64,000 bases of DNA, from IMG/VR virus record IMGVR_UViG_3300020084_000003, positions 62,001-126,000 of that record; one strand, 5' to 3'. Under the pieces are notes generated by a model. It searched no databases. It saw only the letters and a program-made list of their open reading frames with translations, and was not told the origin of the DNA. A program made the translations under genes and the position numbers. Below are positions 12,501-41,995 of the stretch, in pieces; the stretch's first letter is position 1; each line of letters opens with the position of its first letter.

Positions 12501-15134
12501 TTTGCCACAAAATATAGAAGCTGCGTTACTGACTTCTATAGCTTTGAAGGCGTTGGTGTTTGCTATCCAGAATATGATAACGGATATGACGAAACATATG
12601 CACCAGATATTAACATAAACATAGACTTGGCTGGTGCATTCACAGAATTCACATCCGCGCTGAGTGAGTTTGTCCCTCTTACAACCAAGAATGTCAAAAC
12701 TTTGACAAACTCTACAAATTTGGGAACAACCACCACAACAAATACTGTTAATAGCAGAGCAACTAGAACAAGCACTACCACTGTTACTTCTACCACTAAA
12801 ACAGAAGTCACAAATAAAACAACTACAAATACATCTAGCTTGCAACAAAAATCTACAACTAATACAGACAAGGTTGGGGATTTCATCACCAATATGTCCA
12901 TAAGCCCATTCTTGAGAGCTAATGAAATTAGAGTTGCCTTTGCCGGATTAAGACCAAATACTCGCTTCTGGGTATGGTTTGACGGCAAGCCAATAACTGA
13001 TAGATGCGCTATGGCGTCATTTAGAAGCGATGATAGAGATAATGTTGCAAGAATAATTAGAACAGCAAAATGGGGAACAACCATTAAATCAGATGCAAGT
13101 GGTGAACTTGTTTTCATGATTGATTTGCCGGGCGAGACTTTCTATGTCGGTGACAGAGAAATCCTAGTAATGGATGTTGATAGCATTATTTCAAATGATG
13201 CCGCAACATCTACTGGTGTTGTTACTTACAGAGGCTTCAACTTTAGTGTTGAAAAAACTGGCCTAGAAATGTCAACCAGAACTCCAACATTCGATGTTGC
13301 TAAAACTAGAAATGTTTCTGTAAACAAGAAAATTGTAACTACTCAGCAAGTGACTAAAACAACTGCGGCGTTCGATCCTATTGCACAGACATTTGTTGTA
13401 GACGAATCATACACCAATAGCGACTCATTGATGATAACAAAGGTTGACGTTGCGTTCAATAGAAAAAGTGCCGATAAAGGTATAACATTGCAAGTTAGAA
13501 AAACTGTTAATGGATATCCTAGCGATGAGGTATTGCCTTTCGGTAGCGTAAGATTGAACCCATCCAGCGTTAATGTTTCAGCTAATGGGTCTGCATGGAC
13601 TACTTTCACCTTCAAGTCACCGATTACATTGGCGGCAGGCGAGAGCTACTGTATTGTCCTTCTTCCAGATGGCAATTCACCTGATTATCTAATTTATTGT
13701 GCCAAAACAGGTCAAACCGACCTTAGAACTGGAACAAGAATTACATCTGACGTTAATTTGGGAACACTATTTACTTCCACAAATAACATGGCATGGACAC
13801 CATACCAAGATGAAAACTTGACTTTCAGAATCTATAAAGCTCAATATACCGATAATAGTGGCGATTTGTTCTTCAACTTGAAAGATTATGAATTCTTCAA
13901 TATTGGTTCATATACTGGTAAATTCAGAAGAGGCGAGACTGCATTTGTGGTTAAAGCCAACGCTGCTGGAACCATAAGCACAACAAATGGTTCTCCTGTC
14001 GTAACTGGAACCGGCACAAGCTTCACCAGCTTGTTTGCTCTAGGTGATTATATTGCAATTCATAACTCTACTTCTTCAACTTATGACGTTGCTAGAATTT
14101 CTGCTATTGCAAACAACACATCTATGACTTTGGATGAGGTTATGAAGGACAACAGAACAGGTAGAAACTATTTCAGAACTGTTGCGGGTAAAGTTGATTA
14201 TTTCAACACCCAAGCACCTGAAAAATTGTTCTTGAAAGATTCTAATGCCAAAGACGGCACCGTTTTTGCTAACGGAGATACTGTCAGAGGCGAATCAAGC
14301 AACGCTACTGCTGTTATTTCAAATATCTCAAATCTTCCTATCAGTCATTATCAGGCTAATATATACAGAACAAACTTTGATAATACTGAAACAAGATTGT
14401 TCTTGGATACGCAGACAAACGTAAGCGGAACCAGAAGCGTAGTCAACTTGGTAAATGAATTTGGTGAAAATAACAGACTAGGTAATATGCCAACTGTCGT
14501 TAAGAGTAGAAGCAGAGAAATAACCGAAGACAACGGTGCAAGATCATTGAGATTTAGAGTAAATCTTTCAATGAGCGGTTCAGGTCCATACTATGTATCG
14601 CCTATCGTTGACTATGATATTTCCGGTGTTACCTTGTTTGAATATTTAATAAATCCAACAAGCACTGCGGTTGCTGCCAGTGAAAGGTTCTCAGGCGGCG
14701 ATTCCATGACTAAGCATATTTCCAAAAAGGTTACATTGCGAGATGGTTTGGATGCAGAAGACTTGAAAGTTTGGCTAACTGCGTATAGACCACCAGAGAC
14801 AGAAATTTCTGTTTATGTTAAGTTTATATCCGACATTGACCAAACTCCATTGTCAGAAATTCCTTGGACTAGATTGAATATAAGAGACAACCAAAATCTA
14901 AGATCATCTACAACCAATTTGGAAGATTATCGTGAGATTGAATTTAGTCTTGGAAGCACAAACCTTGGAAATAACGGCGGTGCTTTCTTGAACAACGGAG
15001 ATTTCAGATATCTTGGCAGAAGTGGTGAAGTCTACGAGAACTACAAGCATTTCATAATAAAAATAGTTATGAACAGCACAGGACAGCACAGGATACCTAA
15101 AGTCAAAGATATTCGCGCCATCGCACTAACTTAA
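9564..15134 (+). CDS. VrlC-like (DUF4815-type) large virion structural protein, copy 1
   Basis: N-terminal DLNAAPYFNDYDEDKNYHHILFKP..QARELTQLQ, RTFDESGNY, RRYTMSDI, RFKNGIFVDNF and C-terminal PKVKDIRAIALT. Confidence 0.8.
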   Translation: MGLNTDLNAAPYFNDYDEDKNYHHILFKPNVAIQARELTQLQSILQQQVERFGDNILQKGTIVKGGNFFDFKNLPYVKISDNYVNVNAVNMKSFDGASLRGVNSGVTAIVRTFVEGSSSMAPNLNTLYVKYTGSGLDGNGRDIKNFIPGEVLEVSIGNIVQPDISVSVVSFGVDPNPIGFGYAVSCGDGVIYQKGHFVRFENQITVISKYDNKPDGVVVGFITEEEIITAEDDNSLYNNSGGFINQNTPGADRMKLTPKLIVYLKEDAINDENFLSIQEYQEGRLVRRNVETQFNSISKELEKRTFDESGNYSVTGYNITMGDEDDKSKLELRVSPGISYVNGKRVETVGRYDVEIDKATEFSSVYNQDILANYGNFIYVNNVVGAFPLDELKTVNLRSEPQIASSIVGFTPAGTVIGTARVLSYDMESNNLYRVYLFDIKMTGTNVFSSVRSIHSTEAGFVGFGNVILESSRAVLKDTNFRSLIFPLGHSAVKEVITDNTDYVYRKRTNISVGTTGSFTITASGDESFPYSAGSALTSDSIRDIIATNATTGVRYNITSASVDPSGTVLTLNIGALGSSQSVNVVYNIKKLKVRPTGKILKTVYLRINANNHVTGPYSLGWPDVHSIEGIWRGANSTFTENSTGLTNVTSNFTLHRNDNDMYYGISFIKKKNAYTIANTDRFLVKAKVFVKETTGSFSQSFFCVNSYPVDDNSEVLPNDKIRTEHIPNDLRDVIDFRPYAANTANYAESATSGVSTQTSTNLMNTLNFQGNMFMAAPNRSVETSYSYYLARRDRLIINDKGEFSVIKGENSVNPTYPQEPARSMTVARITVPAFPSLSPSVASRSGYPEYGVKVDMDNNRRYTMSDIQRIEDRIGNIEYYTILNALEKSAEDMVIQDSDGLNRFKNGIFVDNFDNMLTCEVKDPDFSASVDSGESALYPRFRAYNLEFATPTTSGGTVLNNNTVASMRFNNVIMEQQTFATKYRSCVTDFYSFEGVGVCYPEYDNGYDETYAPDININIDLAGAFTEFTSALSEFVPLTTKNVKTLTNSTNLGTTTTTNTVNSRATRTSTTTVTSTTKTEVTNKTTTNTSSLQQKSTTNTDKVGDFITNMSISPFLRANEIRVAFAGLRPNTRFWVWFDGKPITDRCAMASFRSDDRDNVARIIRTAKWGTTIKSDASGELVFMIDLPGETFYVGDREILVMDVDSIISNDAATSTGVVTYRGFNFSVEKTGLEMSTRTPTFDVAKTRNVSVNKKIVTTQQVTKTTAAFDPIAQTFVVDESYTNSDSLMITKVDVAFNRKSADKGITLQVRKTVNGYPSDEVLPFGSVRLNPSSVNVSANGSAWTTFTFKSPITLAAGESYCIVLLPDGNSPDYLIYCAKTGQTDLRTGTRITSDVNLGTLFTSTNNMAWTPYQDENLTFRIYKAQYTDNSGDLFFNLKDYEFFNIGSYTGKFRRGETAFVVKANAAGTISTTNGSPVVTGTGTSFTSLFALGDYIAIHNSTSSTYDVARISAIANNTSMTLDEVMKDNRTGRNYFRTVAGKVDYFNTQAPEKLFLKDSNAKDGTVFANGDTVRGESSNATAVISNISNLPISHYQANIYRTNFDNTETRLFLDTQTNVSGTRSVVNLVNEFGENNRLGNMPTVVKSRSREITEDNGARSLRFRVNLSMSGSGPYYVSPIVDYDISGVTLFEYLINPTSTAVAASERFSGGDSMTKHISKKVTLRDGLDAEDLKVWLTAYRPPETEISVYVKFISDIDQTPLSEIPWTRLNIRDNQNLRSSTTNLEDYREIEFSLGSTNLGNNGGAFLNNGDFRYLGRSGEVYENYKHFIIKIVMNSTGQHRIPKVKDIRAIALT

Positions 15135-15216: not shown

Positions 15217-18200
15217 ATGCCATTAGAGACTGATCTAAATGTTCAACCATACCTTAATGATTATGACGAAGAAAAGAATTATCACAAAATTCTTTTCAAA
15301 GAATCAAACCAATTACAAAGCAGAGAGTTAAACCAACTACAACAAATCCTTCAAGGTCAAATTGAAAGATTTGGTGAAACTGTATTGGAAAGAGGTTCTA
15401 TCGTTCAAGGTGGTAACTTTTACGATTATAAAAAGTTGGCTTATGTTAAAATATCAGATAACAACACCAATAAACAGCCGATAGTAATTGAAAACTATAA
15501 CGGTGCAACTCTTCGCGGTGAAAATAGCGGAGTTATGGCTATAGTAATTACTAATGTTTCTGGTTACGAATCAAAATCACCAGACCTTAACACACTATAT
15601 GTCAGATATACACAAACAGGTCAGGACGCATTCGGAACAGACATTAAAAGATTTATTCCCGGTGAAACTCTGATAGCATATAAAAACAACGAAAGAGTTC
15701 CTGAACTAGATGTTAACGTTGCAACTTTTGGTGTAGATTCCAATCCACTAGGTGACGGTTATGGCGTTTCTTGTGGAGAAGGTATTTTATTTCAAAAAGG
15801 ATATTTCACTCAGTTTGGGCAGCAAATTGTCATAGTTTCAAAATACAATACTAATCCTCACAGAGTGAGTGTTGGTTTTGTTACAGAAGAAACAATTACC
15901 AACTTTAACGCAGATGTGTCTTTAAGAGACAATGCAATTGGTAGCAGAAACTTCAACGCTCCGGGTGCAGATAGAATAAAATTGACACCAACTCTTGTTG
16001 TTTACAGCAAAGAGCAAGCTGATGAAGATGACAATTTCCTTCCAATTCAAGAATATGAAAACGGTCTTCTGGTTAGCAAGCGCACTGGAACATCTTTTAG
16101 CGAATCATTGACTAAATCCATATCCAACAGAACATACGAAGAATCAGGCAACTATACTATAATCGGGCATGTCCCGCAAATAGTTTCTGCGCCGGGATCG
16201 GACAATACCCCCGCATTGGTAATAAATCCGGGTGTGTCTTATGTTAATGGAAGACGAGTAGAAACAATCGAAAAAATATATATTGATTTGAATGCCGTCA
16301 CAGATAATGATGGAAATCAAATTGGTCAAATAAGCACTGCAATGGGCGGATACGTAAACTGCGGTGTTGTTCTAGGTAATGCCGCATTGGCAGAATCCAA
16401 AGCTTTAGTGAATTTGAGAGATGCAGTTCAGGTCAACGTCAACTCCCCTCTTGGCTCTGTCATAGGGACAGCAAATTATATTCAATACGAAAATGTTGAA
16501 AATGGAAACAAGCGCCTGTATCTAACAAACATAAGAATGAATACTGGAAGAAGTTTTTCAGAAACTAGAAGTCTAGAAACACCCACTTTCTTGGCTAACT
16601 TGATTTTGGAATCTGGAAAAGCTGTATATAAAGAAGCATCCAAGTCATCATTACTATTCAGAGCAAATGCCAGTGATATTAGCAATATTACTCTTCCTGT
16701 TTCATACCAATCTTATATGACAGGATTGTTCACTGCCAGCGGCGCAGGAACAATATCAACTACTTTGCAAGCAGGGTTTTCTTTCCCATATGAAAATGGG
16801 GCAACATTGAGCGATGCTCAGTTGAGAGAAATAACAATAATAGGAGAAACTGCCCCACAAACCGGAACCCCAACCTACGGTTCCGTGTCGAGTGATGGTG
16901 CGACTTTGACATTAAACGTTACTCAAATTTATGATGCTGGTGCAGCGGTCAACGCTCTTATTCCAGTTGTCGTCACTTTGAATAATATAGAAACAAAAAC
17001 ACTGTCAACAGTTTATATGAAAATAAACCCTAATGGTATGGCTAACAACACAGCTTTCTTCTTGGGATGGCCTGACGTTCATTCTATTGAAGGAATATGG
17101 AGAGGCGCTAACACCACATTCACTGAAAACTCAACCGGCTTGACAAATGTCACCGATAAATTTGTTTTGGATAAAAATAAGACTCCAACATATTATGGAA
17201 CATCTTTAATAAGAAAGAAAACTGGATATACCATAACAAACTCTGATAGATTTCTGGTTAAAGCAAAAGTATTCAGAAGAGTTGCGCCTAATTTGAAGAC
17301 ATTCTCTGCGATCACTAGCTATCCTATTAATGATACCATAACAACTTTACCGGCCACTAGCATTAGAAGCAATGAATTGGACGAGGATACCAGAACATCT
17401 TTCGATTTCAGATTGTATGTGTCCAATGCTGCGGCGTATTCCACGACTGCGGGTTCCGCTACTATTGCCACAAGCGCATCACAATTGAATGGAACAACCA
17501 TAGAAAATAGTATGGTTTTGCCTAAAGTAAATTCTACTATCAATCTAGGGTTTGAATATAAATTCCCAAGAATTGATAGCTTGATTATAAATGAAAAAGG
17601 CAATTTCTCAGTAAGAAGAGGCGTTCCATCTGAAAATCCAAAAGCTCCATATGTAGATGGAAAGAACATGGTTATTGCCAATGTTTATATCCCTACCGGC
17701 ACTCTTATGATGCCAAATACAGCTAAAAGATTGGGTATGGATGATAAGATAATAACCATAAATTCAAATATGAATAGACGCTATACGATGAGAGACATTG
17801 ATCGTATCAATGAAAGAGTTAACAATATTGAATACTACGCCATACTTTCAGCACTTGAAATGGAAACTGAAAACATGGTTGTCAAGGGTGCAGATGGTCT
17901 TGATAGATTTAAGAATGGTATATTCGTTGATAATTTCGAGACAATGCTTACTTGCGATGTTAAAAATCCAGATTTTGCTGCATCAGTAGATGCCAGCGAT
18001 GCATTGCTATATCCTGCGTTTAAAGCATATAACTTGGATTTGGAAATTGATAGTTTTAGCAGCAGCATCGAAGTGAATACAAACGGCGCGGCTTCTTTGA
18101 AATACAGAAGCGTCCTTCTGGATCAGCAACCAGTTGCGACAAAGTTCAGAAATTGCGTAACAGATTTTTATAATTTTACTGGAACAGGTTACATACATCC

Positions 18201-20841
18201 TGAATACGATTTTGGTTACGACGAAACTGTAGCTCCAACTATTAATAAAACAATTGACATGGTTGGTGCCTTTACTGAATTTACAGATAGGCTAAATGAG
18301 TTTGTTCCACTTAAAACTTCAACATCCACAACTACAAATAATAGCAAAGTAATTGATGTTAAGAAAAATACAAACACAACTACCAGTGTAAGTAACACTC
18401 GTTCCACTAGCACTACTACTGTGACTAGCACAACCAGAACAACTACAACTACTCAAAATACTGCTAAAACTGTAACAAATACAAAAGAATTGGTTAATAC
18501 CGGAACTAAGACAACCACTCAAAATGTCGGTAGTTTCATAACTGATGTTCAGTTCAGCCCGTATTTGAGAGAACAATTGCTGAGAGTAGTGTTCTTTGGA
18601 TTAAGACCAAATACAAGATTCTGGGCTTGGTTCGATAAACAACCAGTTAATGAATGGTGTGCGCCTGCCATAATGGAAGGTGACGACATTACAAAAGTAA
18701 AAAGAATTGGTGCATTTGGAAGTGCGCTAAGGTCCGATTCAAATGGTGAATTGGCTATAGTATTTTCTATTCCTAAATCAAAATTCTTTGTCGGTGACAG
18801 GGAGTTTATCGTGATCGACGTTGACGCAATGAATTCTGCGGACTCTGCAACTTCTAGATCATTGGTTACATTTAGAGGGTTTAACTACAGCATAGAAAAA
18901 ACTGGTTTGGAAGTATCAACCAGAATACCTACATTTGATGTTGCAAAAGCGAGAAGTGTTTCTACCTCAGTAACAACTTCTAGAAATACTACAGTAAATA
19001 CCACATCCACCAGCACCACAAGAGTTATTCCTGTAGTTGATGAAAGAGCGATATGGGGTGGTGACGGCGAAGGTCAAGACCCAATTTCTCAAACCTTCAC
19101 TGTTCCTTCTACTTTAACAGATTATCAAAATATAATGATAACTCATGTTGAAATACCGTTCAAAAAGAAGAGTAACAACAGAGGCATTACTTTGCAACTA
19201 AGAAAAACTGAAAACGGTTTTCCGGGTTCAGAGGTATTGGCGTTCGGTTCAGTTCGCGTCCCAAGCAGTTCAGTTTCAGTTTCTAATGATGGTTCTGCTT
19301 ACACCACATTTAAATTCAAGTCACCAGTATCTTTGAGTGCAGGCGAAAGCTACTGTATCGTATTGATGCCAGATGCAAACTCTCCTGACTATCAGGTATT
19401 TTGTGCAAAAACTGGTGAAATAGATTTGAGAACCGGAAACCGTGTTACATTCGATATTCACTCTGGAACACTCTTTACTTCAACAAATAACATGGCATGG
19501 ACTCCTTATCAAGATGAGAACATGGCATTCAAGATATACAGAGCCGAATATACTGAAAAGAATGGAACAGTAAATCTTAGAACCAAAAACTATGAATTTT
19601 TCAATTTGACCTCTCATGTTGGTGATTTCAAAAGAGGCGAAACTGCGTTTGTCATAAATACCTTCCTTGAAGGAAGTTTGACAACCACATCTGGTTCTAA
19701 TGTTGTTACTGCAAGCGGTATAGATTTAAGAAATATTTTCAAAGCTGGCGACCATGTTGCAATTTATAACAGAACAAATGATACTCATGATGTGTCAAGA
19801 GTTTCTTCTGTTATTAGTGCAACGTCAATGGCGCTGGATGAATACATGACCTTAGACATGACAGGCAGACAGTTCTTCAAGACTTTAGTTGGCACTGTAG
19901 ATTATTTCAATAAAAAAGAACCTGTAAGATTATTCTTGAAAGATTCTGTTGCAAAATCCAATATGGTATTCCAAGCAGGCCAAGCTATCAAGGGCGAAAG
20001 AAGTAATGCGGCGGCTATAATAGACGAGGTAATATCTCTTCCTCTAAGCTATTATCAGGCAGATATTCCAAAATTGGATTTAGTCAATACTTCAACAAAA
20101 TTGGATTTGATTAGACAGACAAACTCATCTGGCAGCATATCATCTATACAATCTTCACAACTGTTTGGTGACAATAACAGATTGTCTAACATGGACACAG
20201 TTATCAAAAGTAGAAGTCTTGAACTATCTCAAAACAATGGTGCAAGATCATTCGTATTGAGAACAACTCTATCTCTTGACGGCAATTCTCCATATACCGT
20301 TTCTCCTGCAATAGATCATTCTATTTCTGGTATAACAGCTTATGAGTATTTAATAAATGATTATACTGATGAAGTTTCTGAGAGCGAACATGGTGAAGAT
20401 GGATTGTCACAATCTAAATATATTTCGAAGGTAATCAACCTTAGAGAAGGTTTTGATGCCGAAGATTTGAACCTGTGGTTGACTGCATACAAACCAGCGA
20501 ATACTGAAATAAATGTTTATGTCAAATTCATTTCAGAAATTGATAACAGAGCGCCCACCGATATAGCATGGACTAAATTGGTATTGCAAGACAGTAGATC
20601 ATTTAGATCATCATCTACAAATACAAATGACTTCAAAGAATACGCATATAAAATACCTGTAGGCGGAAGTGAAAGTTCAATTGGAGCGTTCATAGATGAG
20701 GCTGGAAACTTCAAATACTACAATGCTGACGGCGGATTGTATGATAATTACAAACAGTTTATTGTAAAAATTATCATAAATTCCAAAGGTCAGAATTTTA
20801 TACCAACAGTGAAAGACGTAAGGGCTATAGCATTAACATGA
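15217..20841 (+). CDS. VrlC-like (DUF4815-type) large virion structural protein, copy 2 (paralog of 9564..15134)
   Basis: Colinear similarity to copy 1 from the N-terminus (DLNVQPYLNDYDEEKNYHKILFK) to the C-terminus (PTVKDVRAIALT). Confidence 0.8.
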   Translation: MPLETDLNVQPYLNDYDEEKNYHKILFKESNQLQSRELNQLQQILQGQIERFGETVLERGSIVQGGNFYDYKKLAYVKISDNNTNKQPIVIENYNGATLRGENSGVMAIVITNVSGYESKSPDLNTLYVRYTQTGQDAFGTDIKRFIPGETLIAYKNNERVPELDVNVATFGVDSNPLGDGYGVSCGEGILFQKGYFTQFGQQIVIVSKYNTNPHRVSVGFVTEETITNFNADVSLRDNAIGSRNFNAPGADRIKLTPTLVVYSKEQADEDDNFLPIQEYENGLLVSKRTGTSFSESLTKSISNRTYEESGNYTIIGHVPQIVSAPGSDNTPALVINPGVSYVNGRRVETIEKIYIDLNAVTDNDGNQIGQISTAMGGYVNCGVVLGNAALAESKALVNLRDAVQVNVNSPLGSVIGTANYIQYENVENGNKRLYLTNIRMNTGRSFSETRSLETPTFLANLILESGKAVYKEASKSSLLFRANASDISNITLPVSYQSYMTGLFTASGAGTISTTLQAGFSFPYENGATLSDAQLREITIIGETAPQTGTPTYGSVSSDGATLTLNVTQIYDAGAAVNALIPVVVTLNNIETKTLSTVYMKINPNGMANNTAFFLGWPDVHSIEGIWRGANTTFTENSTGLTNVTDKFVLDKNKTPTYYGTSLIRKKTGYTITNSDRFLVKAKVFRRVAPNLKTFSAITSYPINDTITTLPATSIRSNELDEDTRTSFDFRLYVSNAAAYSTTAGSATIATSASQLNGTTIENSMVLPKVNSTINLGFEYKFPRIDSLIINEKGNFSVRRGVPSENPKAPYVDGKNMVIANVYIPTGTLMMPNTAKRLGMDDKIITINSNMNRRYTMRDIDRINERVNNIEYYAILSALEMETENMVVKGADGLDRFKNGIFVDNFETMLTCDVKNPDFAASVDASDALLYPAFKAYNLDLEIDSFSSSIEVNTNGAASLKYRSVLLDQQPVATKFRNCVTDFYNFTGTGYIHPEYDFGYDETVAPTINKTIDMVGAFTEFTDRLNEFVPLKTSTSTTTNNSKVIDVKKNTNTTTSVSNTRSTSTTTVTSTTRTTTTTQNTAKTVTNTKELVNTGTKTTTQNVGSFITDVQFSPYLREQLLRVVFFGLRPNTRFWAWFDKQPVNEWCAPAIMEGDDITKVKRIGAFGSALRSDSNGELAIVFSIPKSKFFVGDREFIVIDVDAMNSADSATSRSLVTFRGFNYSIEKTGLEVSTRIPTFDVAKARSVSTSVTTSRNTTVNTTSTSTTRVIPVVDERAIWGGDGEGQDPISQTFTVPSTLTDYQNIMITHVEIPFKKKSNNRGITLQLRKTENGFPGSEVLAFGSVRVPSSSVSVSNDGSAYTTFKFKSPVSLSAGESYCIVLMPDANSPDYQVFCAKTGEIDLRTGNRVTFDIHSGTLFTSTNNMAWTPYQDENMAFKIYRAEYTEKNGTVNLRTKNYEFFNLTSHVGDFKRGETAFVINTFLEGSLTTTSGSNVVTASGIDLRNIFKAGDHVAIYNRTNDTHDVSRVSSVISATSMALDEYMTLDMTGRQFFKTLVGTVDYFNKKEPVRLFLKDSVAKSNMVFQAGQAIKGERSNAAAIIDEVISLPLSYYQADIPKLDLVNTSTKLDLIRQTNSSGSISSIQSSQLFGDNNRLSNMDTVIKSRSLELSQNNGARSFVLRTTLSLDGNSPYTVSPAIDHSISGITAYEYLINDYTDEVSESEHGEDGLSQSKYISKVINLREGFDAEDLNLWLTAYKPANTEINVYVKFISEIDNRAPTDIAWTKLVLQDSRSFRSSSTNTNDFKEYAYKIPVGGSESSIGAFIDEAGNFKYYNADGGLYDNYKQFIVKIIINSKGQNFIPTVKDVRAIALT

Positions 20842-28601: not shown

Positions 28602-29474
28602 ATGGCCTTTGCGAATCATTTTTATAACAAGCTTACAAGAAAATATGTTGCGGTATTTGGTAGCCTTTTTAATAAACTAACAATAAATCGTTACGACACA
28701 AACGGAGAGCCGGTTCAATCTTTGCCGGTTCCGATAAGCTTTGGACCTTGGCAGAAATTCCTTTTGAAGAACACCGCTGATCCTAATCTAGACAGAAAAT
28801 ATCAAATTCTACTTCCTAGAATGTCTTTTGATCTAGAGAACATATCATATGATCCAGAAAGAAGAGTTTCGCAGATTCAAAAATTGAAAGTTTCAGGCCC
28901 AGACGGAAACGATTTCGTATACACTCCAACGCCTTATATATTAAACTTTACTTTGCATGTGACTGCCTTGAACATGGAAGACGGCATTCAAATAATTGAA
29001 CAAATTATTCCATTCTTCCAGCCTAGCTATACACCTTCTGTTTATTTGATAGATGGACTAGAAGAACCAGTTGATATCTCAATAGATTTGGAGCAAGTGA
29101 CATTTACAGACGCATATGACGGCGACTTTCAATCAAGTAGAGTTATGGTTTGGACATTAATGTTTACCATGAAAGGATATTACTTCGGTCCTGTCAGACA
29201 CGGTAAGGTCATTAAATTTGTGGATGTTCAAAATAAGCTATCCAAAACAAGTGCTTTCGATCAAAATTATCTTGGTTCTATTATCACTGTTCAACCGGGA
29301 ATGGATGCGAATGGTGAACCAACTAAGAACATAGATGAAACCGTAAGTTATGTTTCTATAAATATTGATGATGATTGGGATTATTTGAAACAATTGCACA
29401 CCTTTGAAGAGTTACTTGAAAAAGGCTTATCAGACCAAAATCCTGATCCTCACAGAACCAATGGAAAACTATAG
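28602..29474 (+). CDS. gp15: Tail sheath stabilizer/completion protein gp15
   Basis: FYNKLTRKYVAVFGSLFN, LPRMSF, QIIEQIIPFFQP motifs. Confidence 0.93.
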   Translation: MAFANHFYNKLTRKYVAVFGSLFNKLTINRYDTNGEPVQSLPVPISFGPWQKFLLKNTADPNLDRKYQILLPRMSFDLENISYDPERRVSQIQKLKVSGPDGNDFVYTPTPYILNFTLHVTALNMEDGIQIIEQIIPFFQPSYTPSVYLIDGLEEPVDISIDLEQVTFTDAYDGDFQSSRVMVWTLMFTMKGYYFGPVRHGKVIKFVDVQNKLSKTSAFDQNYLGSIITVQPGMDANGEPTKNIDETVSYVSINIDDDWDYLKQLHTFEELLEKGLSDQNPDPHRTNGKL

Positions 29475-29483
29475 GAAAATTAA

Positions 29484-30020
29484 ATGAGCGATGATATCAT
29501 ATCAAAGGCATTGGGCTTGCCTAGTATGCCTGACATGAGAGATGACGTTAACTCTGAGATAGAAGACGCAGAGATAGTTGAAGAAACTATTGCAGAAGAC
29601 GTGACCGAGAATGAAACAACTCAATCAAATGAATTGGTTGATTATGAAGAAACACATGCTGAAATTATTGACAATGATACAAATGATGTTGCTATATTTG
29701 AATCTGAAATAGATAAAGAATATATTGATGATGTTACTAAGGCCAAGAAAAACGTTTCTAAAATGATAGTGGATGGTCATTGGGCGTTTGAGAAATTACT
29801 TCTCGTCGCCACTCAGACAGAAAATCCAACTGCATTTGATTCTGCTTCTAGATTACTCAAAACTCTAGTTGATGCTAACAAAGAAATGGCTAACCTGTCC
29901 AACATGAAGCGTGACGCAAAAACTATGAAAAATAGAGATGCTAACGGTATTACTAACAACACAACAAATAACACTGTCATTTTAACTACAGCAGAAATAT
30001 TAAAAACACTTAAAAAATGA
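29484..30020 (+). CDS. gp16: Terminase small subunit gp16
   Basis: Position after gp15; helical core ENPTAFDSASRLLKTLVDANKE and NNTTNNTVILTTAEI tail. Confidence 0.75.
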   Translation: MSDDIISKALGLPSMPDMRDDVNSEIEDAEIVEETIAEDVTENETTQSNELVDYEETHAEIIDNDTNDVAIFESEIDKEYIDDVTKAKKNVSKMIVDGHWAFEKLLLVATQTENPTAFDSASRLLKTLVDANKEMANLSNMKRDAKTMKNRDANGITNNTTNNTVILTTAEILKTLKK

Positions 30021-30027
30021 GGTTTAT

Positions 30028-30510
30028 ATGGAAGCTTTTAGTGACAGATTTAATTCGTTATTCACAAATAAAACATTAGTAATAGGTAAAAGAGGCGCAG
30101 GAAAAACATCTCTGTTAATAGAACTAGCAGCAGAGCATTTTCTAAAAGGTAATTTTAGAATACTGATAATAGATAAGGACTACAGTAGTTCTCTTTCCAA
30201 AAGAGATGAAATAGTCAATTTGATAATCAGTAAGAGCGGTGATGATAAAATTATCTCAAAAGTAGACAAAAAAGAAATCGCAAGTGAAAAAATAAATTCT
30301 ATAATAGCATTTGGGACTAGTGAAACTCACAAGATGCGCGGGTATTCCCTCGACGTTGTTTTGCTTGACAATATAGATTTATACGATTTTTACGATTGCA
30401 TGGTCAGTATATATCCATGCCTAGCAACAAATTTAAAATCAAAAATAATAGCAACCTCAACATCCGAAGTGGATGATTTGAGGAATTTTAATAAGGTATA
30501 TATGGAATAA
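30028..30510 (+). CDS. Stand-alone terminase-ATPase-like P-loop protein (degenerate gp17 paralog)
   Basis: Walker A GKRGAGKTS; MRGYSLDVVLLDN..SIYPCL..KIIATSTS aligns with gp17 IRGKAVAFLYIDE..SVYPTI..KVLLTSTP; has a GAGG SD. Confidence 0.7.
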   Translation: MEAFSDRFNSLFTNKTLVIGKRGAGKTSLLIELAAEHFLKGNFRILIIDKDYSSSLSKRDEIVNLIISKSGDDKIISKVDKKEIASEKINSIIAFGTSETHKMRGYSLDVVLLDNIDLYDFYDCMVSIYPCLATNLKSKIIATSTSEVDDLRNFNKVYME

Positions 30511-30511
30511 A

Positions 30512-32155
30512 ATGGCAGAAAAGAAAGACAGTGGCGGTTACTTAGGCAACCCGCTATTAAAAAAACATGGAGAGAAAATTGAGTGGACTTATGAAATGCT
30601 TATGGAGTTTCAAAAGTGCGCCAAAGACCCAATTTACTTTGCAGAGAAATATATCTACATCGTAAACATGAATGAAGGTTTGATACCTATTAAACTCTAC
30701 GATTATCAAAAAGAAATTATAACATCAATTACAAATAATAGAAGGGTTGTAGTCAACACTGCTAGACAGTCTGGTAAAACTACATCTGCATCCGCAATTA
30801 TTCTACACTACATTCTATTTAATGAACATAAAACTGTTGCTCTACTTGCTAACAAAGCTGACGCAGCACGTGAAATTATGGACAGAATTCAAATATCATA
30901 TCAAAACCTTCCTAAATTCTTGCAACAAGGTGTTATGGAATGGAATAAAGGTTCTATTGAATTAGAAAATGGATGTAAAGTTCTGGCTGCTGCCTCTAGC
31001 TCATCTGCTATTCGTGGTAAAGCTGTTGCGTTTTTGTATATTGACGAAACAGCATTCTTGGAAAATTGGGACGAATTCTACGCCTCAGTTTATCCTACAA
31101 TTTCATCTGGTAAAGAAAGTAAAGTTCTTTTAACATCAACCCCCAAAGGTATGAATCATTTTTATAAGATATGCACCGAAGCCATGGAAATTTCGCCAGA
31201 AGCGGAAAAGGCAGGCTCTAATGTTGGAAAAAATGGTTTCATTTATATTGAAGTTAAATGGGATCGTGTGCCGGGTAGAGATGAAAAATGGAAACAAGAT
31301 GCTCTTGCCAGCTTAGGTTGGAACTACGATCAGTTCAATCAGGAATTTGATTGCTCATTCATTGGTAGCTCTGACACTTTGATTTCATCTCAAGGTTTGT
31401 CCAATTTGGTTGCAAAAAGACCTCTTCAACATTCAAATAATATATTCCAGTATGAGCAAGTCAAAGCTGACAGACAATATGCTCTTATTTCAGACGTTGG
31501 GCGTGGAAAAGGTTTGGACTATTCTGCATTTTCAATTATTGACGTTACAGAGATGCCTTACAAACAGGTATGTGTTTATAGAAACAATGAAATAGGTCCA
31601 ATTGACTATGCTGCGGTTATTCATAATTTCGCAAAGAAATATAATGAAGCGATGGTTTTGATAGAAGTTAACGATATTGGTGGACAGGTAGCAGACAGTT
31701 TGTGGATGGACTTTGGTTACGAGAATGTTCTTTCTACAGAAACTAATGGGCGTTCAGGTAAAAGAATATCAGGTGGTTTTGGTAGAAACGTAGACAGAGG
31801 TATTAGAACATCTGAAAAGGTAAAGATTATTGGATGCTCCATCTTGAAGCTTCTTATAGAACAAAATCAGTTAATTATTTGTGACGAAAACACTATTGAC
31901 GAATTGAGAAGATTTTCAAAGAAAAATAATAGCTATGCTGCTGAAAAAGGTTCTCACGATGACCTTGTTATGACTCTAGTTTTATTTGCATGGTTGTCCG
32001 ATCAGGGCTATTTTGCTGAAATGACTGATATAAATACATTAAATAAATTAAGAGAAAAGACAGACGACGAATTAGATGATATGGTTATGCCATTTTTCTA
32101 CATTAATGATGGCAATGCCGATGATAATTCATACTGGAAACCCGTCAACCTATAA
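30512..32155 (+). CDS. gp17: Terminase large subunit gp17
   Basis: YQ motif, ARQSGKTT Walker A, YIDE Walker B, TSTP, nuclease DVGRGKGLDYSAF..HDDLVM. Confidence 0.97.
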   Translation: MAEKKDSGGYLGNPLLKKHGEKIEWTYEMLMEFQKCAKDPIYFAEKYIYIVNMNEGLIPIKLYDYQKEIITSITNNRRVVVNTARQSGKTTSASAIILHYILFNEHKTVALLANKADAAREIMDRIQISYQNLPKFLQQGVMEWNKGSIELENGCKVLAAASSSSAIRGKAVAFLYIDETAFLENWDEFYASVYPTISSGKESKVLLTSTPKGMNHFYKICTEAMEISPEAEKAGSNVGKNGFIYIEVKWDRVPGRDEKWKQDALASLGWNYDQFNQEFDCSFIGSSDTLISSQGLSNLVAKRPLQHSNNIFQYEQVKADRQYALISDVGRGKGLDYSAFSIIDVTEMPYKQVCVYRNNEIGPIDYAAVIHNFAKKYNEAMVLIEVNDIGGQVADSLWMDFGYENVLSTETNGRSGKRISGGFGRNVDRGIRTSEKVKIIGCSILKLLIEQNQLIICDENTIDELRRFSKKNNSYAAEKGSHDDLVMTLVLFAWLSDQGYFAEMTDINTLNKLREKTDDELDDMVMPFFYINDGNADDNSYWKPVNL

Positions 32156-40373: not shown

Positions 40374-41483
40374 TTAGAACATTGGACTGTCTGGAACAGT
40401 AGTCGCAATCTCAGTATAGTGTAATAGTTCTAGTTTATTCACTACACCATCTGTTACTCTAATTGTTCCGTATCGTTTGAACCATGTTGAATAAATTCTG
40501 TCTAGAAAGATTTTAAGCTTTTCTTTATCTTGTTCAGATGCTTCCATTTCATCTGATACGCCTAGAAGAATTACCTCTTCAACCATTTCATGGTCAAACT
40601 TGATATGCTCAATGCCTGTTTTTGCTTCCATATATTTGTTAGTAATTCCGACTAATGAAAGATATGATATCGTGAGAATATCCCATTCAAGATAAGTCAT
40701 ACCAAGTTGGTCTTCATCTGAATTTGAAATGCCTAATCCGTCCGTAGGGACAACGCGCCAGAACTTTTCGGGCAGACCTAGCTCTTGTGCAATTACAGGA
40801 ATTTCTGTGGATTTGAAGAAGCTTTGTAGAGGGGCAAAGTCTCCCACATCACCGTTCACTGTGAATAAGCCTGCTGAATATTCTGAGAAATTGTCAGTGC
40901 TTACCACAATGCCATTTACAGACTTGGCAGCATCATACAGGTATGTCATACGCAGTCTAGCATATACATTTCCCCTACGTATATTGTAATCACTGGAATT
41001 TTCAGAATCTAATCCAATATCATCTACCATAACACTTGCTGCATAAGTCAAATCTTTGTAGTTGAGTTTAATGCCAAGAAATTCACACACTTCTTTTGCA
41101 AGATCGACTTCTTTTGGTTTTTGATTAATAGGAAGGGTATATGCGTGAATTTTAATGTCTGAGTTTTTTGCTTGTGCTGCTTTAAGAACGGCTAGAACGG
41201 TTGCGGAATCTGCGCCACCTGAAACGCCTACAACAAAGTTTGTAATGCCCGTTGCATCAACATAATCTATAACTGAACTTACAACATAATCCGTAATATC
41301 TTGCTCATGTCCATGATAAAAATATAGTGGTTTACAAACTACGCTTTTTAGCATATGGTGCATCCAAGGGCTTAGTGGTTCTGCTTCATTCTGTCGGGAG
41401 TTGTAAAGAATTCGTTCAAAAATCCCGTTGTCATATTCGATTGCAGCATTGGTAGCATTTTCTAGCATAGATTTTACATCCAT
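40374..41483 (-). CDS. nadE: NH3-dependent NAD+ synthetase (NadE family); ATG at 41483 preferred over TTG at 41498
   Basis: GVSGGADS PP-loop, GNVYARLRMTYLY, STDNFSE, GDVGDFAPL, PTDGL..SDEDQLG. Confidence 0.88.
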   Translation of the reverse strand: MDVKSMLENATNAAIEYDNGIFERILYNSRQNEAEPLSPWMHHMLKSVVCKPLYFYHGHEQDITDYVVSSVIDYVDATGITNFVVGVSGGADSATVLAVLKAAQAKNSDIKIHAYTLPINQKPKEVDLAKEVCEFLGIKLNYKDLTYAASVMVDDIGLDSENSSDYNIRRGNVYARLRMTYLYDAAKSVNGIVVSTDNFSEYSAGLFTVNGDVGDFAPLQSFFKSTEIPVIAQELGLPEKFWRVVPTDGLGISNSDEDQLGMTYLEWDILTISYLSLVGITNKYMEAKTGIEHIKFDHEMVEEVILLGVSDEMEASEQDKEKLKIFLDRIYSTWFKRYGTIRVTDGVVNKLELLHYTEIATTVPDSPMF

Positions 41484-41494
41484 GTGTCTTCCTT

Positions 41495-41995
41495 TCAAAT
41501 AAAATTTTCTAAGTAGTATTTAATCTCTGGTATCTGAGTCGCAAAATTAAATACTGGAATGTTATACAACTTGGCGATGCGAATCGCTTGGGCTGTCCCA
41601 CCTGTCATCTCACCATTTGGCGTCCAGCACAATATGAAAGATGCAGGCGTTTTAAGATCATCTCCTAACACCTGATTTGCATTTCTTGACATATATAACT
41701 GACCGTCTTCGTTGAGCCTGTTTGGTTTCGGATGCAGCTTTTTGGTGTAGTAGTCGTTAAAGGGTGGAATGATATAATCCTTACCGTTGACGAATTTTTT
41801 CTGAAACCCATCGAACGGAAGGTATATCCGTCTACCCTCTGGTGGTGCGCCTTCTTCAAAGAAAGAATCTGCACCAGCCGCACCGCCAGACCTTAGTATA
41901 TAACCTTTCTCATAAAGAAAAGTTGCAGTGTTTGCCATGATAGATTTGAACTTAGTAGGAGTCGCGCGACTTCCTATTCCTGCATAATACTTCAT
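41495..41995 (-). CDS. SLOG/DprA-like Rossmann-fold nucleotide-binding protein
   Basis: YAGIGSRATP, LRSGGAAGADSFFE, RNANQVLG, GGTAQAIRIA..IPVFN. Confidence 0.75.
   Translation of the reverse strand: MKYYAGIGSRATPTKFKSIMANTATFLYEKGYILRSGGAAGADSFFEEGAPPEGRRIYLPFDGFQKKFVNGKDYIIPPFNDYYTKKLHPKPNRLNEDGQLYMSRNANQVLGDDLKTPASFILCWTPNGEMTGGTAQAIRIAKLYNIPVFNFATQIPEIKYYLENFI

What the first reader, a model, noticed from the sequence alone, without database searches (positions are those of the whole stretch)
30028..30510. Catalytically degenerate, stand-alone copy of the terminase ATPase domain between gp16 and gp17
Seen: this 160-aa ORF aligns motif-by-motif with the adjacent gp17 ATPase. Walker A is KRGAGKTS vs ARQSGKTT (Arg kept), MRGYSLD vs IRGKAVA, Walker B VLLDN vs LYIDE (catalytic Glu replaced by Asn), SIYPCL vs SVYPTI, and the coupling motif IIATSTS vs VLLTSTP. 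It lacks the adenine-binding YQ motif and the whole nuclease domain, but has its own SD and ends 1 nt before the gp17 start. Knowledge: the Walker-B Glu is required for hydrolysis, and bacterial Avs (STAND) immune receptors detect large terminase. Inference: a pseudo-ATPase co-expressed with terminase, acting either as a decoy for terminase-sensing defence or as a regulator of the packaging motor. This is the best candidate here for an undescribed system.
Basis: partly seen in the sequence, partly recalled or inferred. Interest (0 to 1): 0.8.

Follow-up and report, generated by a model that had tools for sequence, protein, structure and literature searches.

The report
Dead terminase-ATPase copy inside terminase operon
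A lake-water T4-like giant phage carries, between its two DNA-packaging genes, a small well-conserved gene that copies only the ATP-binding core of the packaging motor and lacks the residue needed to burn ATP, so it is probably a non-catalytic partner of the motor, though its role is untested.

Summary
Window 30028-30510 (+) encodes a 160-aa protein between TerS/gp16 and TerL/gp17. It is a homologue of the RecA-like core of the TerL ATPase: hhalign against T4-like TerL cores gives 98.3% probability and E=1.8e-14; a profile search hits T4 gp17 structures at E=2e-10; Foldseek's top hit is the T4 gp17 ATPase.

It keeps the Walker A Lys, the P-loop Arg, the Walker B Asp and the "RG" arginine. That arginine sits at the position of the P74-26 trans-acting finger R139. 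The catalytic Glu is Asn. The YQ adenine motif, lid subdomain and nuclease domain are absent.

It is not decaying. A sister 286-kb phage has a 48%-identical orthologue in the same slot, and two strains of that sister give dN/dS 0.044, like the essential neighbours. A remote third phage has the same TerS-[short, Glu-less copy]-TerL layout. The nearest TerL relatives (60% identity) lack the gene.

No RNA data or complex modelling were available, so function is inferred. The most likely role is a non-catalytic partner or regulator of terminase. The Avs-decoy idea is untested and not favoured, because isolated TerL ATPase domains and T4 vs.8 activate Avs2 and/or Upx. T4 vs.8 is the closest described stand-alone TerL-like ATPase. 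I rate this a new variant of a known kind.

The parts
29357..29364 (+). T4-type late-promoter motif TATAAATA, the last one upstream of the terminase genes. The next on this strand is at 32029.
   Evidence: 23 matches in the window against 6.5 expected, mostly just upstream of late genes; no terminator-like site between 29365 and 32155 on the + strand. Co-transcription of gp16, ORF160 and gp17 is inferred, not shown.
29484..30020 (+). gp16, small terminase subunit (TerS), 178 aa
   Evidence: phrog_445 E=7.6e-11, plus phrog_31126 and phrog_735 (all TerS). It lies in T4 gene order after gp13, gp14 and gp15.
30019..30022 (+). Shine-Dalgarno-like GAGG for ORF160. It overlaps the gp16 stop codon and lies 5 nt before the ATG.
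   Evidence: Read directly. The same ATGAGGT context is present in sister phage L078.
30028..30510 (+). ORF160: stand-alone, catalytically degenerate copy of the RecA-like core (N-subdomain I) of the TerL ATPase
   Evidence: homology and fold. (orthologues and purifying selection).
30085..30111 (+). Walker A / P-loop G20-S28 (GKRGAGKTS), with P-loop Arg R22 and Lys K26
   Evidence: R22 and G25 are invariant across the short family and all TerLs. K26 is kept in three of the four short proteins (Cys in P0005).
30337..30342 (+). R104-G105, the invariant 'RG' motif at the position of the P74-26 TerL trans-acting arginine finger R139
   Evidence: the R139A mutant chain 4znj has Ala in exactly this profile column and loses 5 bits. 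PMC5727402 describes R139 as the biochemically confirmed trans finger, with an Arg at the same place in T4.
30355..30372 (+). Walker B strand V110-N115 (VVLLDN): Asp114 kept, catalytic Glu replaced by Asn115 (AAT at 30370-30372)
   Evidence: It aligns with T4 gp17 MIYIDE (D255/E256). The four family members carry N, N, D, N here; all 26 TerLs carry E.
30454..30462 (+). C-motif (coupling motif) T143-S144-T145 at the end of strand I140-S146
   Evidence: It aligns with TerL TST/STP and T4 gp17 TTT.
30512..32155 (+). gp17, complete large terminase (TerL), 547 aa, with intact YQ, Walker A, DE, C-motif and nuclease domain. It starts 1 nt after the ORF160 stop.
   Evidence: Terminase_6N 3.2e-26 and Terminase_6C 2.3e-10; phrog_5989 4e-62. 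(motifs).

Best explanation
ORF160 is a real, selectively maintained late gene. It encodes a stand-alone paralogue of the RecA-like core of the large-terminase ATPase. It belongs to a small, rare family of short proteins (160-195 aa). In at least three phages these sit between the small and large terminase genes.

The protein keeps the phosphate-binding loop (K26, R22), the Mg-binding Asp (D114), the C-motif and the conserved arginine (R104) that in TerL rings reaches into the neighbour's active site. It has lost the catalytic Glu (N115), the adenine-reading YQ motif, the lid subdomain, the nuclease domain and everything needed to sit on the portal. It therefore cannot be a motor itself.

The most likely mechanism is inferred, not shown. 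It is made together with TerS and TerL from one late transcript. It docks on a TerL (or TerS-TerL) subunit through the same face that TerL subunits use on each other. It then acts as a non-catalytic partner, either completing or capping a TerL active site with its arginine finger. That would tune terminase ATPase, nuclease or oligomerisation before the motor assembles on the portal. The clamp-loader delta-prime stator, which does not bind ATP yet donates an arginine, is a comparable case (comparison from my own knowledge).

Confidence is about 0.9 for what the gene is and about 0.35 for this mechanism.
For: Homology and fold:
- phrog_2 (TerL): E=2e-8.
- Family profile against T4/RB49 gp17 structures: E=2e-10 over residues 17-160.
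- hhalign of the short family against 19 T4-like TerL cores: 98.3% probability, E=1.8e-14.
- AF2 model: pLDDT 82.8. Its top Foldseek hits are T4 gp17 ATPase, Sf6 gp2, P74-26 and D6E TerL.
- An independent ESM Atlas model has pTM 0.82 and TM 0.81-0.85 to TerL clusters.

Residue pattern:
- R22, G25, R104, G105, D114 and P130 are invariant across the short proteins and all TerLs.
- The catalytic Glu is absent in all four short proteins and present in all 26 TerLs.
- R104 is at the R139 trans-finger column.

Selection:
- An orthologue (48% identity) occupies the same slot in a 286.6-kb sister phage.
- In the unsaturated pair L078/L086 there are 36 nt differences but only 5 conservative aa changes. 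dN/dS is 0.044, against 0.012-0.098 for gp13-gp20. The binomial P against neutrality is 8e-18.
- The chance of a random 160-codon open frame at this base composition is 5e-7.
- Conservation concentrates on the Walker A block (69%) and the RG/Walker B/C-motif block (59%), against 31% in the middle.

Linkage to terminase:
- The TerS-[short]-TerL order recurs in L078, L086 and the remote L081 (TerL 33% identical).
- The four short proteins form one clade (95/95). A clade of P0005 with its own TerL is rejected (p-AU 0.007).
- Junctions are of the coupling type: the SD overlaps the gp16 stop, there is a 1-nt gap to gp17, and in L078 there is an 8-nt overlap.
- The single late-promoter motif upstream is at 29357, with no terminator inside the unit.
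Against: - No expression evidence: no RNA run was listed.
- The AF2 model used an alignment dominated by TerLs and so leans towards that fold. The ESM model partly offsets this.
- The gene is dispensable for T4-like packaging. All seven nearest TerL relatives (60% identity) have gp16 overlapping gp17 directly.
- It evolves about five times faster in dN than gp17 across the deep pair (0.48 against 0.10). Together with its patchy spread, that also fits a conflict gene (anti-defence).
- P0005 has Cys for the Walker A Lys, so nucleotide binding may not be required.
- The clade of short proteins joins long branches, so long-branch attraction is possible.
- The fourth member (P0004) lies on a 1-kb contig with no TerL visible.
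Confidence: 0.4

Rival explanations
1. Anti-defence mimic. The protein imitates the TerL ATPase core. It binds terminase-sensing immune proteins (Avs1-3, Upx) without letting them oligomerise, or it shields nascent TerL from them. This would protect the phage when TerL is made.
For: - The distribution is patchy and lineage-specific.
- It diverges fastest of the gp13-gp18 module across the deep pair: 48% identity against 66-87%.
- It is predicted to be co-expressed with the trigger, TerL.
- Avs2 and Upx recognise the TerL ATPase domain specifically.
- Avs3-TerL (8dgc) is among the structural neighbours.
Against: - Isolated TerL ATPase domains strongly activate EcAvs2 and all tested Upx. Upx activation does not need catalytic residues.
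- The T4 TerL-like protein vs.8 is itself toxic with EcAvs2.
- A TerL-like core is therefore more likely a trigger than a decoy.
- Within-species selection is as strong and conservative as for structural genes (dN/dS 0.044), with no sign of diversifying change.
- The host and its defences are unknown.
Confidence: 0.15
2. Non-functional relic. The ORF is a leftover piece of an older or foreign TerL gene, left behind by duplication, gene replacement, or homing-endonuclease or intein-driven recombination at the terminase locus.
For: - The gp16-gp17 junction accepts insertions in other T4-like phages: L017 has one extra ORF and L040 has two.
- TerL genes in this group carry inteins (L081; L062 and L075 sequences).
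- ORF160 is absent from the nearest relatives.
Against: - dN/dS is 0.044 with dS 0.38 in L078/L086, and 28 of 30 single-difference codons are synonymous.
- The frame is open in four independent sequences despite saturated synonymous divergence.
- It has clean domain boundaries and its own start and SD.
- Motif-centred conservation is seen.
- The sequence is identical in at least 8 lake samples.
Confidence: 0.03
3. A nucleotide- or DNA-binding accessory factor that does not work through TerL. Examples are helping TerS recognise or hold the concatemer end, or acting in another late DNA transaction. On this reading it is placed in the operon only for timing.
For: - The P-loop, Walker B Asp and C-motif are conserved, so some ligand-bound state seems to matter.
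- TerL ATPase cores grip DNA in other phages (title and abstract of bioRxiv 10.1101/080440).
- T4 vs.8 shows that TerL-like ATPases exist outside the packaging operon.
Against: - The position between TerS and TerL is conserved in three divergent phages.
- The inter-subunit arginine R104 is invariant, while the residues for autonomous catalysis are lost.
Confidence: 0.15
4. N-terminal extension of TerL made by recoding. A +1 frameshift near the ORF160 stop (stop-codon read-through in L081) would fuse the dead ATPase core to gp17. This would give a minor two-headed TerL isoform.
For: - The gp17 frame is open from 30482, upstream of the ORF160 stop (stop-to-stop ORF 30482-32152).
- In L081, P0005 and TerL are in the same frame, with only the TGA stop in the 36-nt spacer (read by hand).
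Against: - No slippery site is evident at 30482-30510.
- The frame relation differs between the phages: +1 in the window and L078, 0 in L081. No common recoding signal is conserved.
- gp17 has its own start in all of them.
Confidence: 0.03

Closest known systems
Large terminase (TerL, T4 gp17) ATPase N-subdomain I; Pfam Terminase_6N (PF03237), PHROG phrog_2
   Same: - Same RecA-like ASCE core.
- Same order and spacing of Walker A (with P-loop Arg), the RG arginine, Walker B Asp and the C-motif.
- Profile-profile E=1.8e-14. T4 gp17 ATPase is the best structural match.
   Different: - 160 aa against 547.
- No N-terminal ~65 residues with the YQ adenine motif, no lid (N-subdomain II) and no RNase H-like nuclease.
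- The catalytic Glu is replaced by Asn.
- About 21% identity to its own gp17.
- It gives no reported hit to Pfam Terminase_6N at E<=1.
T4 vs.8 (NP_049732, phrog_1488), the stand-alone TerL-like ATPase of T-even phages
   Same: - A short stand-alone protein (219 aa) of T4-like phages.
- Homologous to the TerL ATPase core, with RQ-type Walker A and the RG motif.
- Function unknown.
- Noted as TerL-like and toxic with EcAvs2 in bioRxiv 10.64898/2026.04.30.721860.
   Different: - vs.8 keeps the catalytic DE (YIIDE).
- vs.8 lies next to denV, far from genes 16 and 17, on the other strand block.
- vs.8 is widespread: 1011 phage records.
- ORF160 matches it only marginally (phrog_1488 E=1.1e-3; hhalign 9.6%, E=3e-3).
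- No vs.8 homologue lies in this window.
Non-catalytic paralogue subunits of ring ATPases, for example clamp-loader delta-prime (functional analogy only, from my own knowledge)
   Same: An inactive paralogue encoded with the active enzyme. It retains an inter-subunit arginine while lacking its own catalysis.
   Different: A different ATPase clade (AAA+). No evidence here of hetero-oligomer formation.
P0005 in locus L081 (195 aa), a remote member of the same short family
   Same: - It lies between TerS (phrog_445) and TerL.
- It has the RG motif and Walker B 'DN' without Glu, and the same C-terminal boundary.
- 31% identical to ORF160.
   Different: - It keeps about 25 more N-terminal residues.
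- It passes the Pfam Terminase_6N cut-off (29.1 bits against 22).
- Its Walker A Lys is Cys.
- Its adjacent TerL carries a LAGLIDADG intein.

Membership tests
Large terminase ATPase (TerL N-terminal domain, Terminase_6N / phrog_2) | RecA-like ASCE fold superposable on the gp17 ATPase | tested here: met
   Foldseek top hits are 2o0j and 2o0h (T4 gp17 ATPase), E=4e-7, TMq 0.69-0.72. ESM Atlas structure search gives TM 0.81-0.85 to TerL clusters.
Large terminase ATPase (TerL N-terminal domain, Terminase_6N / phrog_2) | Walker A with P-loop arginine (xRQxGKT/S) | tested here: met
   The motif is G20-K-R22-G-A-G-K26-T-S. R22 and G25 are invariant with all TerLs.
Large terminase ATPase (TerL N-terminal domain, Terminase_6N / phrog_2) | Catalytic glutamate directly after the Walker B aspartate (T4 E256) | tested here: not met
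   ORF160 has D114-N115. All 26 TerLs aligned have D-E. It aligns with T4 gp17 IDE.
Large terminase ATPase (TerL N-terminal domain, Terminase_6N / phrog_2) | Adenine-binding YQ motif upstream of Walker A | tested here: not met
   R7 and F8 occupy the YQ columns in alignment A3. The ORF starts only 19 residues before Walker A.
Large terminase ATPase (TerL N-terminal domain, Terminase_6N / phrog_2) | Lid subdomain and C-terminal RNase H-like nuclease domain | tested here: not met
   The protein ends 14 residues after the C-motif. There is no Terminase_6C hit. The HMM match to gp17 stops at the end of N-subdomain I.
Large terminase ATPase (TerL N-terminal domain, Terminase_6N / phrog_2) | Score above the Pfam Terminase_6N gathering cut-off | tested here: not met
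   No Terminase_6N hit is listed at E<=1 for ORF160. P0005 passes with 29.1 bits against 22. phrog_2 gives E=2e-8.
T4 vs.8 family (phrog_1488) | Significant match to the family profile | tested here: not met
   ORF160 against phrog_1488: E=1.1e-3, 19.8 bits, partial. vs.8 itself scores 263.9 bits. hhalign probability is 9.6%.
T4 vs.8 family (phrog_1488) | Intact Walker B D-E | tested here: not met
   vs.8 has YIIDE. ORF160 has LLDN.
Short Glu-less TerL-core family defined here (ORF160, P0002/P0007, P0004, P0005) | 160-195 aa, TerL core only, no catalytic Glu, monophyletic apart from TerLs | tested here: met
   These were the only significant short hits among 1.84 billion representatives. They form a clade with 95/95 support (long-branch caveat). 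The residue after the Walker B Asp is N, N, D, N.
Short Glu-less TerL-core family defined here (ORF160, P0002/P0007, P0004, P0005) | Encoded between TerS and TerL | tested here: met
   Seen in the window, L078, L086 and L081. P0004 cannot be judged because its contig is 1 kb.
Anti-defence decoy of terminase sensors (Avs1-3, Upx) | Binds the sensor and prevents its activation by TerL | not testable with these tools
   No complex prediction or assay was available. The literature shows that TerL ATPase domains and vs.8 activate the sensors rather than block them.

The most novel reading that the evidence does not exclude
ORF160 is a phage-encoded terminase mimic. It is made together with TerL and occupies or blinds terminase-sensing immune receptors (Avs1-3, Upx), so the real TerL goes undetected. 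This would be the first decoy directed at bacterial pattern-recognition receptors. A second reading is almost as novel and more likely (about 0.3): it is a third, non-catalytic terminase subunit that supplies a trans arginine finger to TerL.
Probability: 0.12. Interest if true: 0.85.

Novelty: new variant of a known kind. Interest (0 to 1): 0.55.

Why it matters
Packaging terminases of tailed phages are described as two-protein enzymes, TerS and TerL. How the TerL ring is kept inactive before it docks on the portal, and how its subunits use a trans-acting arginine, are still open questions.

This gene is a naturally occurring, strongly conserved TerL core. It has lost catalysis but kept the inter-subunit arginine, and it is wired into the terminase operon in several divergent phages. 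That makes it a ready-made probe of those subunit contacts. If it does bind TerL, it would be a third terminase component.

If it instead acts on terminase-sensing immunity, it would show a new counter-defence principle. In either case it adds to T4 vs.8 as evidence that T4-like phages repeatedly keep stand-alone TerL-ATPase paralogues whose roles are unknown.

Tried and rejected
1. Close homologues by word-indexed search: only the protein itself was found. A profile search added nothing beyond the four known members and one ordinary TerL fragment, P0006, which has DE intact.
2. tblastn against 50,697 phage genomes gave no significant hit. The best hits were E>=2, partly in TerL genes.
3. Pattern scans of viral contigs with A2, P0004 and P0005, and of metagenome contigs with A4, recovered only the window's own contig.
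4. The single-sequence AF2 model was poor (pLDDT 54.5) and was replaced by an alignment-based model.
5. My first tree was spoiled because I picked tail-sheath ORFs instead of TerL for ten loci. It was found and redone.
6. Expression: no RNA run was listed.
7. Microdiversity: Logan contigs of four lake runs were identical to the window at 2-5x depth, giving no SNPs in ORF160. The high-depth block at 30815-31177 comes from conserved TerL DNA of other phages, not from this one.
8. The deep-pair dN/dS (window against L078) is unreliable because dS is saturated. It was superseded by the L078/L086 pair.
9. PADLOC, NCBIfam and Pfam gave only generic P-loop matches below cut-offs. I rejected STAND, ParA, PtuA and VirB4 readings.
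10. Split or intron-interrupted TerL was rejected because gp17 downstream is complete.
11. Independent duplication of each phage's own TerL was rejected for P0005 by the AU test (p=0.007), with the long-branch caveat.
12. Literature searches for terminase paralogues, decoys or pseudo-ATPases found no description apart from vs.8.
Full report
**What is there**

Window 30028-30510 (+) is a 160-codon ORF with an ATG start.
- A GAGG lies at 30019-30022, overlapping the TGA stop of the upstream gene and 5 nt before the ATG.
- The ORF's TAA stop is followed after one base by the ATG of the next gene (30512).
- The upstream gene (29484-30020) is the small terminase: phrog_445, E=7.6e-11.
- The downstream gene (30512-32155) is a complete T4-type large terminase: Terminase_6N E=3e-26, Terminase_6C E=2e-10, phrog_5989 E=4e-62.
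- The surrounding 40 kb is a canonical T4-like late module: gp6, gp7, gp8, fibre proteins, gp13, gp14, gp15, gp16, ORF160, gp17, gp18, gp19, gp20, gp21, gp22, gp23.
- The window comes from a 284,776-bp lake-water viral contig, IMGVR_UViG_3300020084_000003.

**Is it a terminase-ATPase copy?**

Yes. Pfam sees only sub-threshold generic P-loop matches, but several independent lines agree.
- PHROGs places residues 17-158 on the TerL family phrog_2 at E=2e-8, inside the segment that gp17 itself covers.
- A profile of the four short relatives hits only T4/RB49 gp17 among 177,635 PDB sequences at E=2.4e-10 to 1.2e-9, over its whole length. The next hit is at E=0.003.
- hhalign of that profile against 19 T4-like TerL ATPase cores gives 98.3% probability and E=1.8e-14.
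- An AlphaFold2 model built on alignment A3 has pLDDT 82.8. Its best PDB matches are the T4 gp17 ATPase domain (2o0j, E=4e-7, TMq 0.72), then Sf6 gp2, P74-26 and D6E TerL. BFVD matches are nearly all TerLs.
- That alignment is dominated by TerLs, so the AF2 model leans that way. The ESM Atlas holds an alignment-free model of the same sequence (pTM 0.82), whose structural neighbours are again TerL clusters at TM 0.81-0.85.

**Motifs**

| Feature | ORF160 | Status |
|---|---|---|
| Walker A | G20-K-R22-G-A-G-K26-T-S | Lys and the TerL-specific P-loop Arg kept |
| 'RG' motif | R104-G105 | Invariant in every short protein and every TerL |
| Walker B Asp | D114 | Kept |
| Catalytic Glu | N115 | Replaced; the four short proteins have N, N, D, N and all 26 TerLs have E |
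| C-motif | T143-S-T145 | Kept |
| YQ adenine motif | R7/F8 in those columns | Absent |
| TerL N-terminal ~65 residues, lid subdomain, nuclease domain | none | Absent |

- R104 is the column in which the P74-26 R139A mutant chain (4znj) carries Ala. R139 is the biochemically confirmed trans-acting arginine finger, and an Arg sits at the same place in T4 (PMC5727402).
- N115 aligns with T4 E256.
- Walker A to Walker B and Walker B to C-motif distances equal those in gp17.
- The protein is therefore the RecA-like core only. It can plausibly hold a nucleotide and present an inter-subunit arginine, but it cannot hydrolyse ATP by the TerL mechanism.

**Is it a live gene?**

Yes.
- An exhaustive HMMER search of 1.84 billion representatives found one clear orthologue, P0002 (165 aa, 48% identity, E=6e-38), and two remote short relatives, P0004 (173 aa) and P0005 (195 aa).
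- P0002 sits in exactly the same gp16-[x]-gp17 slot of a 286,639-bp contig that is collinear with the window (L078).
- Across that deep pair, synonymous sites are saturated (dS about 2 for all genes). ORF160 is the fastest-evolving gene of the gp13-gp18 module: 48% identity against 66-87%, and dN 0.48 against 0.10 for gp17.
- A third contig, L086, carries a variant at least 90% identical (P0007) and gives an unsaturated comparison.
  - There are 36 nucleotide differences but only five conservative amino-acid changes: N32D, N51S, V54T, I63V and L66I.
  - dN/dS is 0.044 with dS 0.38. The range for gp13-gp20 is 0.012-0.098.
  - 28 of 30 single-difference codons are synonymous, giving a binomial P of 8e-18.
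- At this base composition a random 160-codon frame stays open with probability 5e-7.
- Identity between ORF160 and P0002 is 69% around Walker A, 59% from H101 to the C-motif and 31% in between. The nucleotide-site face is what is being kept.
- The relic reading is therefore rejected.

**Distribution and linkage to terminase**

- The seven nearest TerL relatives (60% identity) have gp16 overlapping gp17 by 8 nt, with nothing in between. The gene is therefore accessory.
- Other T4-like contigs carry unrelated small ORFs at the same junction: L017 has one and L040 has two. None has a PHROG match.
- In L081, a 98.8-kb contig whose TerL is only 33% identical to gp17, P0005 also lies between a phrog_445 TerS and TerL.
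- In a maximum-likelihood tree of ATPase cores, the four short proteins form one clade apart from the TerLs (95/95). Forcing P0005 together with its own TerL is rejected (p-AU 0.007). Long branches meet there, so this remains provisional.
- The family is rare. Pattern scans of IMG/VR and JGI metagenomes returned only the window's own contig.

**Expression**

- No RNA run was listed.
- DNA contigs from four other lake samples are identical to the window at low depth.
- The T4 late-promoter motif TATAAATA is strongly enriched (23 against 6.5 expected) and sits just upstream of most late genes. The last one before the terminase genes is at 29357 and the next is at 32029. No terminator-like site lies between them.
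- Together with the junction geometry, this predicts one late transcript and translational coupling of gp16, ORF160 and gp17. This is an inference.

**How it most likely works**

The pattern of what is kept and what is lost is typical of a non-catalytic paralogue that works on the active enzyme.
- Kept: the P-loop, Mg-binding Asp, C-motif and the trans arginine.
- Lost: the catalytic Glu, adenine reader, lid, nuclease and portal contacts.

I propose that it docks on TerL through the ring interface and either completes or caps a TerL active site. That would tune ATPase, nuclease or oligomerisation before portal docking (mechanism confidence about 0.35).

The decoy idea cannot be tested here and is not favoured.
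- TerL ATPase domains alone activate EcAvs2 and Upx.
- Upx does not need catalytic residues.
- The T4 TerL-like protein vs.8 is toxic with EcAvs2 (bioRxiv 10.64898/2026.04.30.721860).

**Comparison with the known**

The closest described thing is T4 vs.8 (phrog_1488, 219 aa). It is a stand-alone TerL-like ATPase present in 1011 phage records and annotated as hypothetical.

ORF160 differs from it in several ways.
- It is only marginally similar: phrog_1488 E=1e-3, and hhalign 9.6%.
- It lacks the Glu that vs.8 keeps.
- It sits inside the terminase operon rather than next to denV.

Literature searches found no description of a Glu-less TerL core between TerS and TerL.

**Verdict**

This is a new variant of a known kind, of moderate-to-good interest.

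Noticed in passing
L081:6625-9273 (+) and L081:6001-6588 (+): The TerL next to P0005 is 882 aa. It carries a LAGLIDADG-type intein inserted right after the Walker A 'SARQTGK' (C-extein resumes at 'TAISC' after '...VTHN'). P0005 itself has Cys in place of the Walker A Lys (GDRGSGCTT). P0005 and this TerL are in the same reading frame, with only the TGA stop in the 36-nt spacer.
   Followed up: partly
L017:3494-3958 (+); L040:3448-3771 and 3764-3961 (+): Other T4-like phages carry unrelated small ORFs (154 aa; 107 and 65 aa) between gp16 and gp17. Their visible N-terminal stretches include hydrophobic, membrane-like runs, and none has a PHROG match. The TerS-TerL junction appears to be a recurrent insertion site for accessory genes.
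   Followed up: partly
window 9564-15134 (+) and 15217-20841 (+); also 1792-7341 (+): Two adjacent giant paralogous proteins (1856 and 1874 aa) both match phrog_358 and phrog_877 (unknown function). They lie between the baseplate wedge genes and the fibre genes. A 1849-aa baseplate-wedge protein (phrog_17744) whose profile match covers only its first ~490 residues lies upstream.
   Followed up: no
window, 23 sites, e.g. 7358, 15173, 20942, 29357, 32151, 32180, 34127, 34755, 37015, 37921, 38946 (+): The T4 late-promoter motif TATAAATA is 3.5-fold enriched (23 against 6.5 expected; no shuffle reached 23). It sits just upstream of most late structural genes. This implies a gp55-type late transcription system in this 285-kb lake phage.
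   Followed up: partly
window 30815-31177: In four lake metagenomes this stretch of gp17 collects 50-600x summed contig depth, against 2-5x for the rest of the phage, with many partial and divergent contigs. The conserved TerL segment is shared with far more abundant T4-like phages in the same lakes.
   Followed up: no
window 40374-41498 (-): A 374-aa protein matching phage NAD synthetase families (phrog_11189, E=3e-37) lies directly after the major capsid gene, on the opposite strand. It may be an auxiliary metabolic gene.
   Followed up: no
L084:10254-10913 (-) (T4 vs.8, NC_000866 64253-64912): T4 vs.8 is a TerL-ATPase-like protein with GRQSGKS, FRG and YIIDE motifs. Homologues occur in 1011 phage records, nearly all annotated 'hypothetical'. 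The old T4 record X04567 lists many alternative starts for it.
   Followed up: partly
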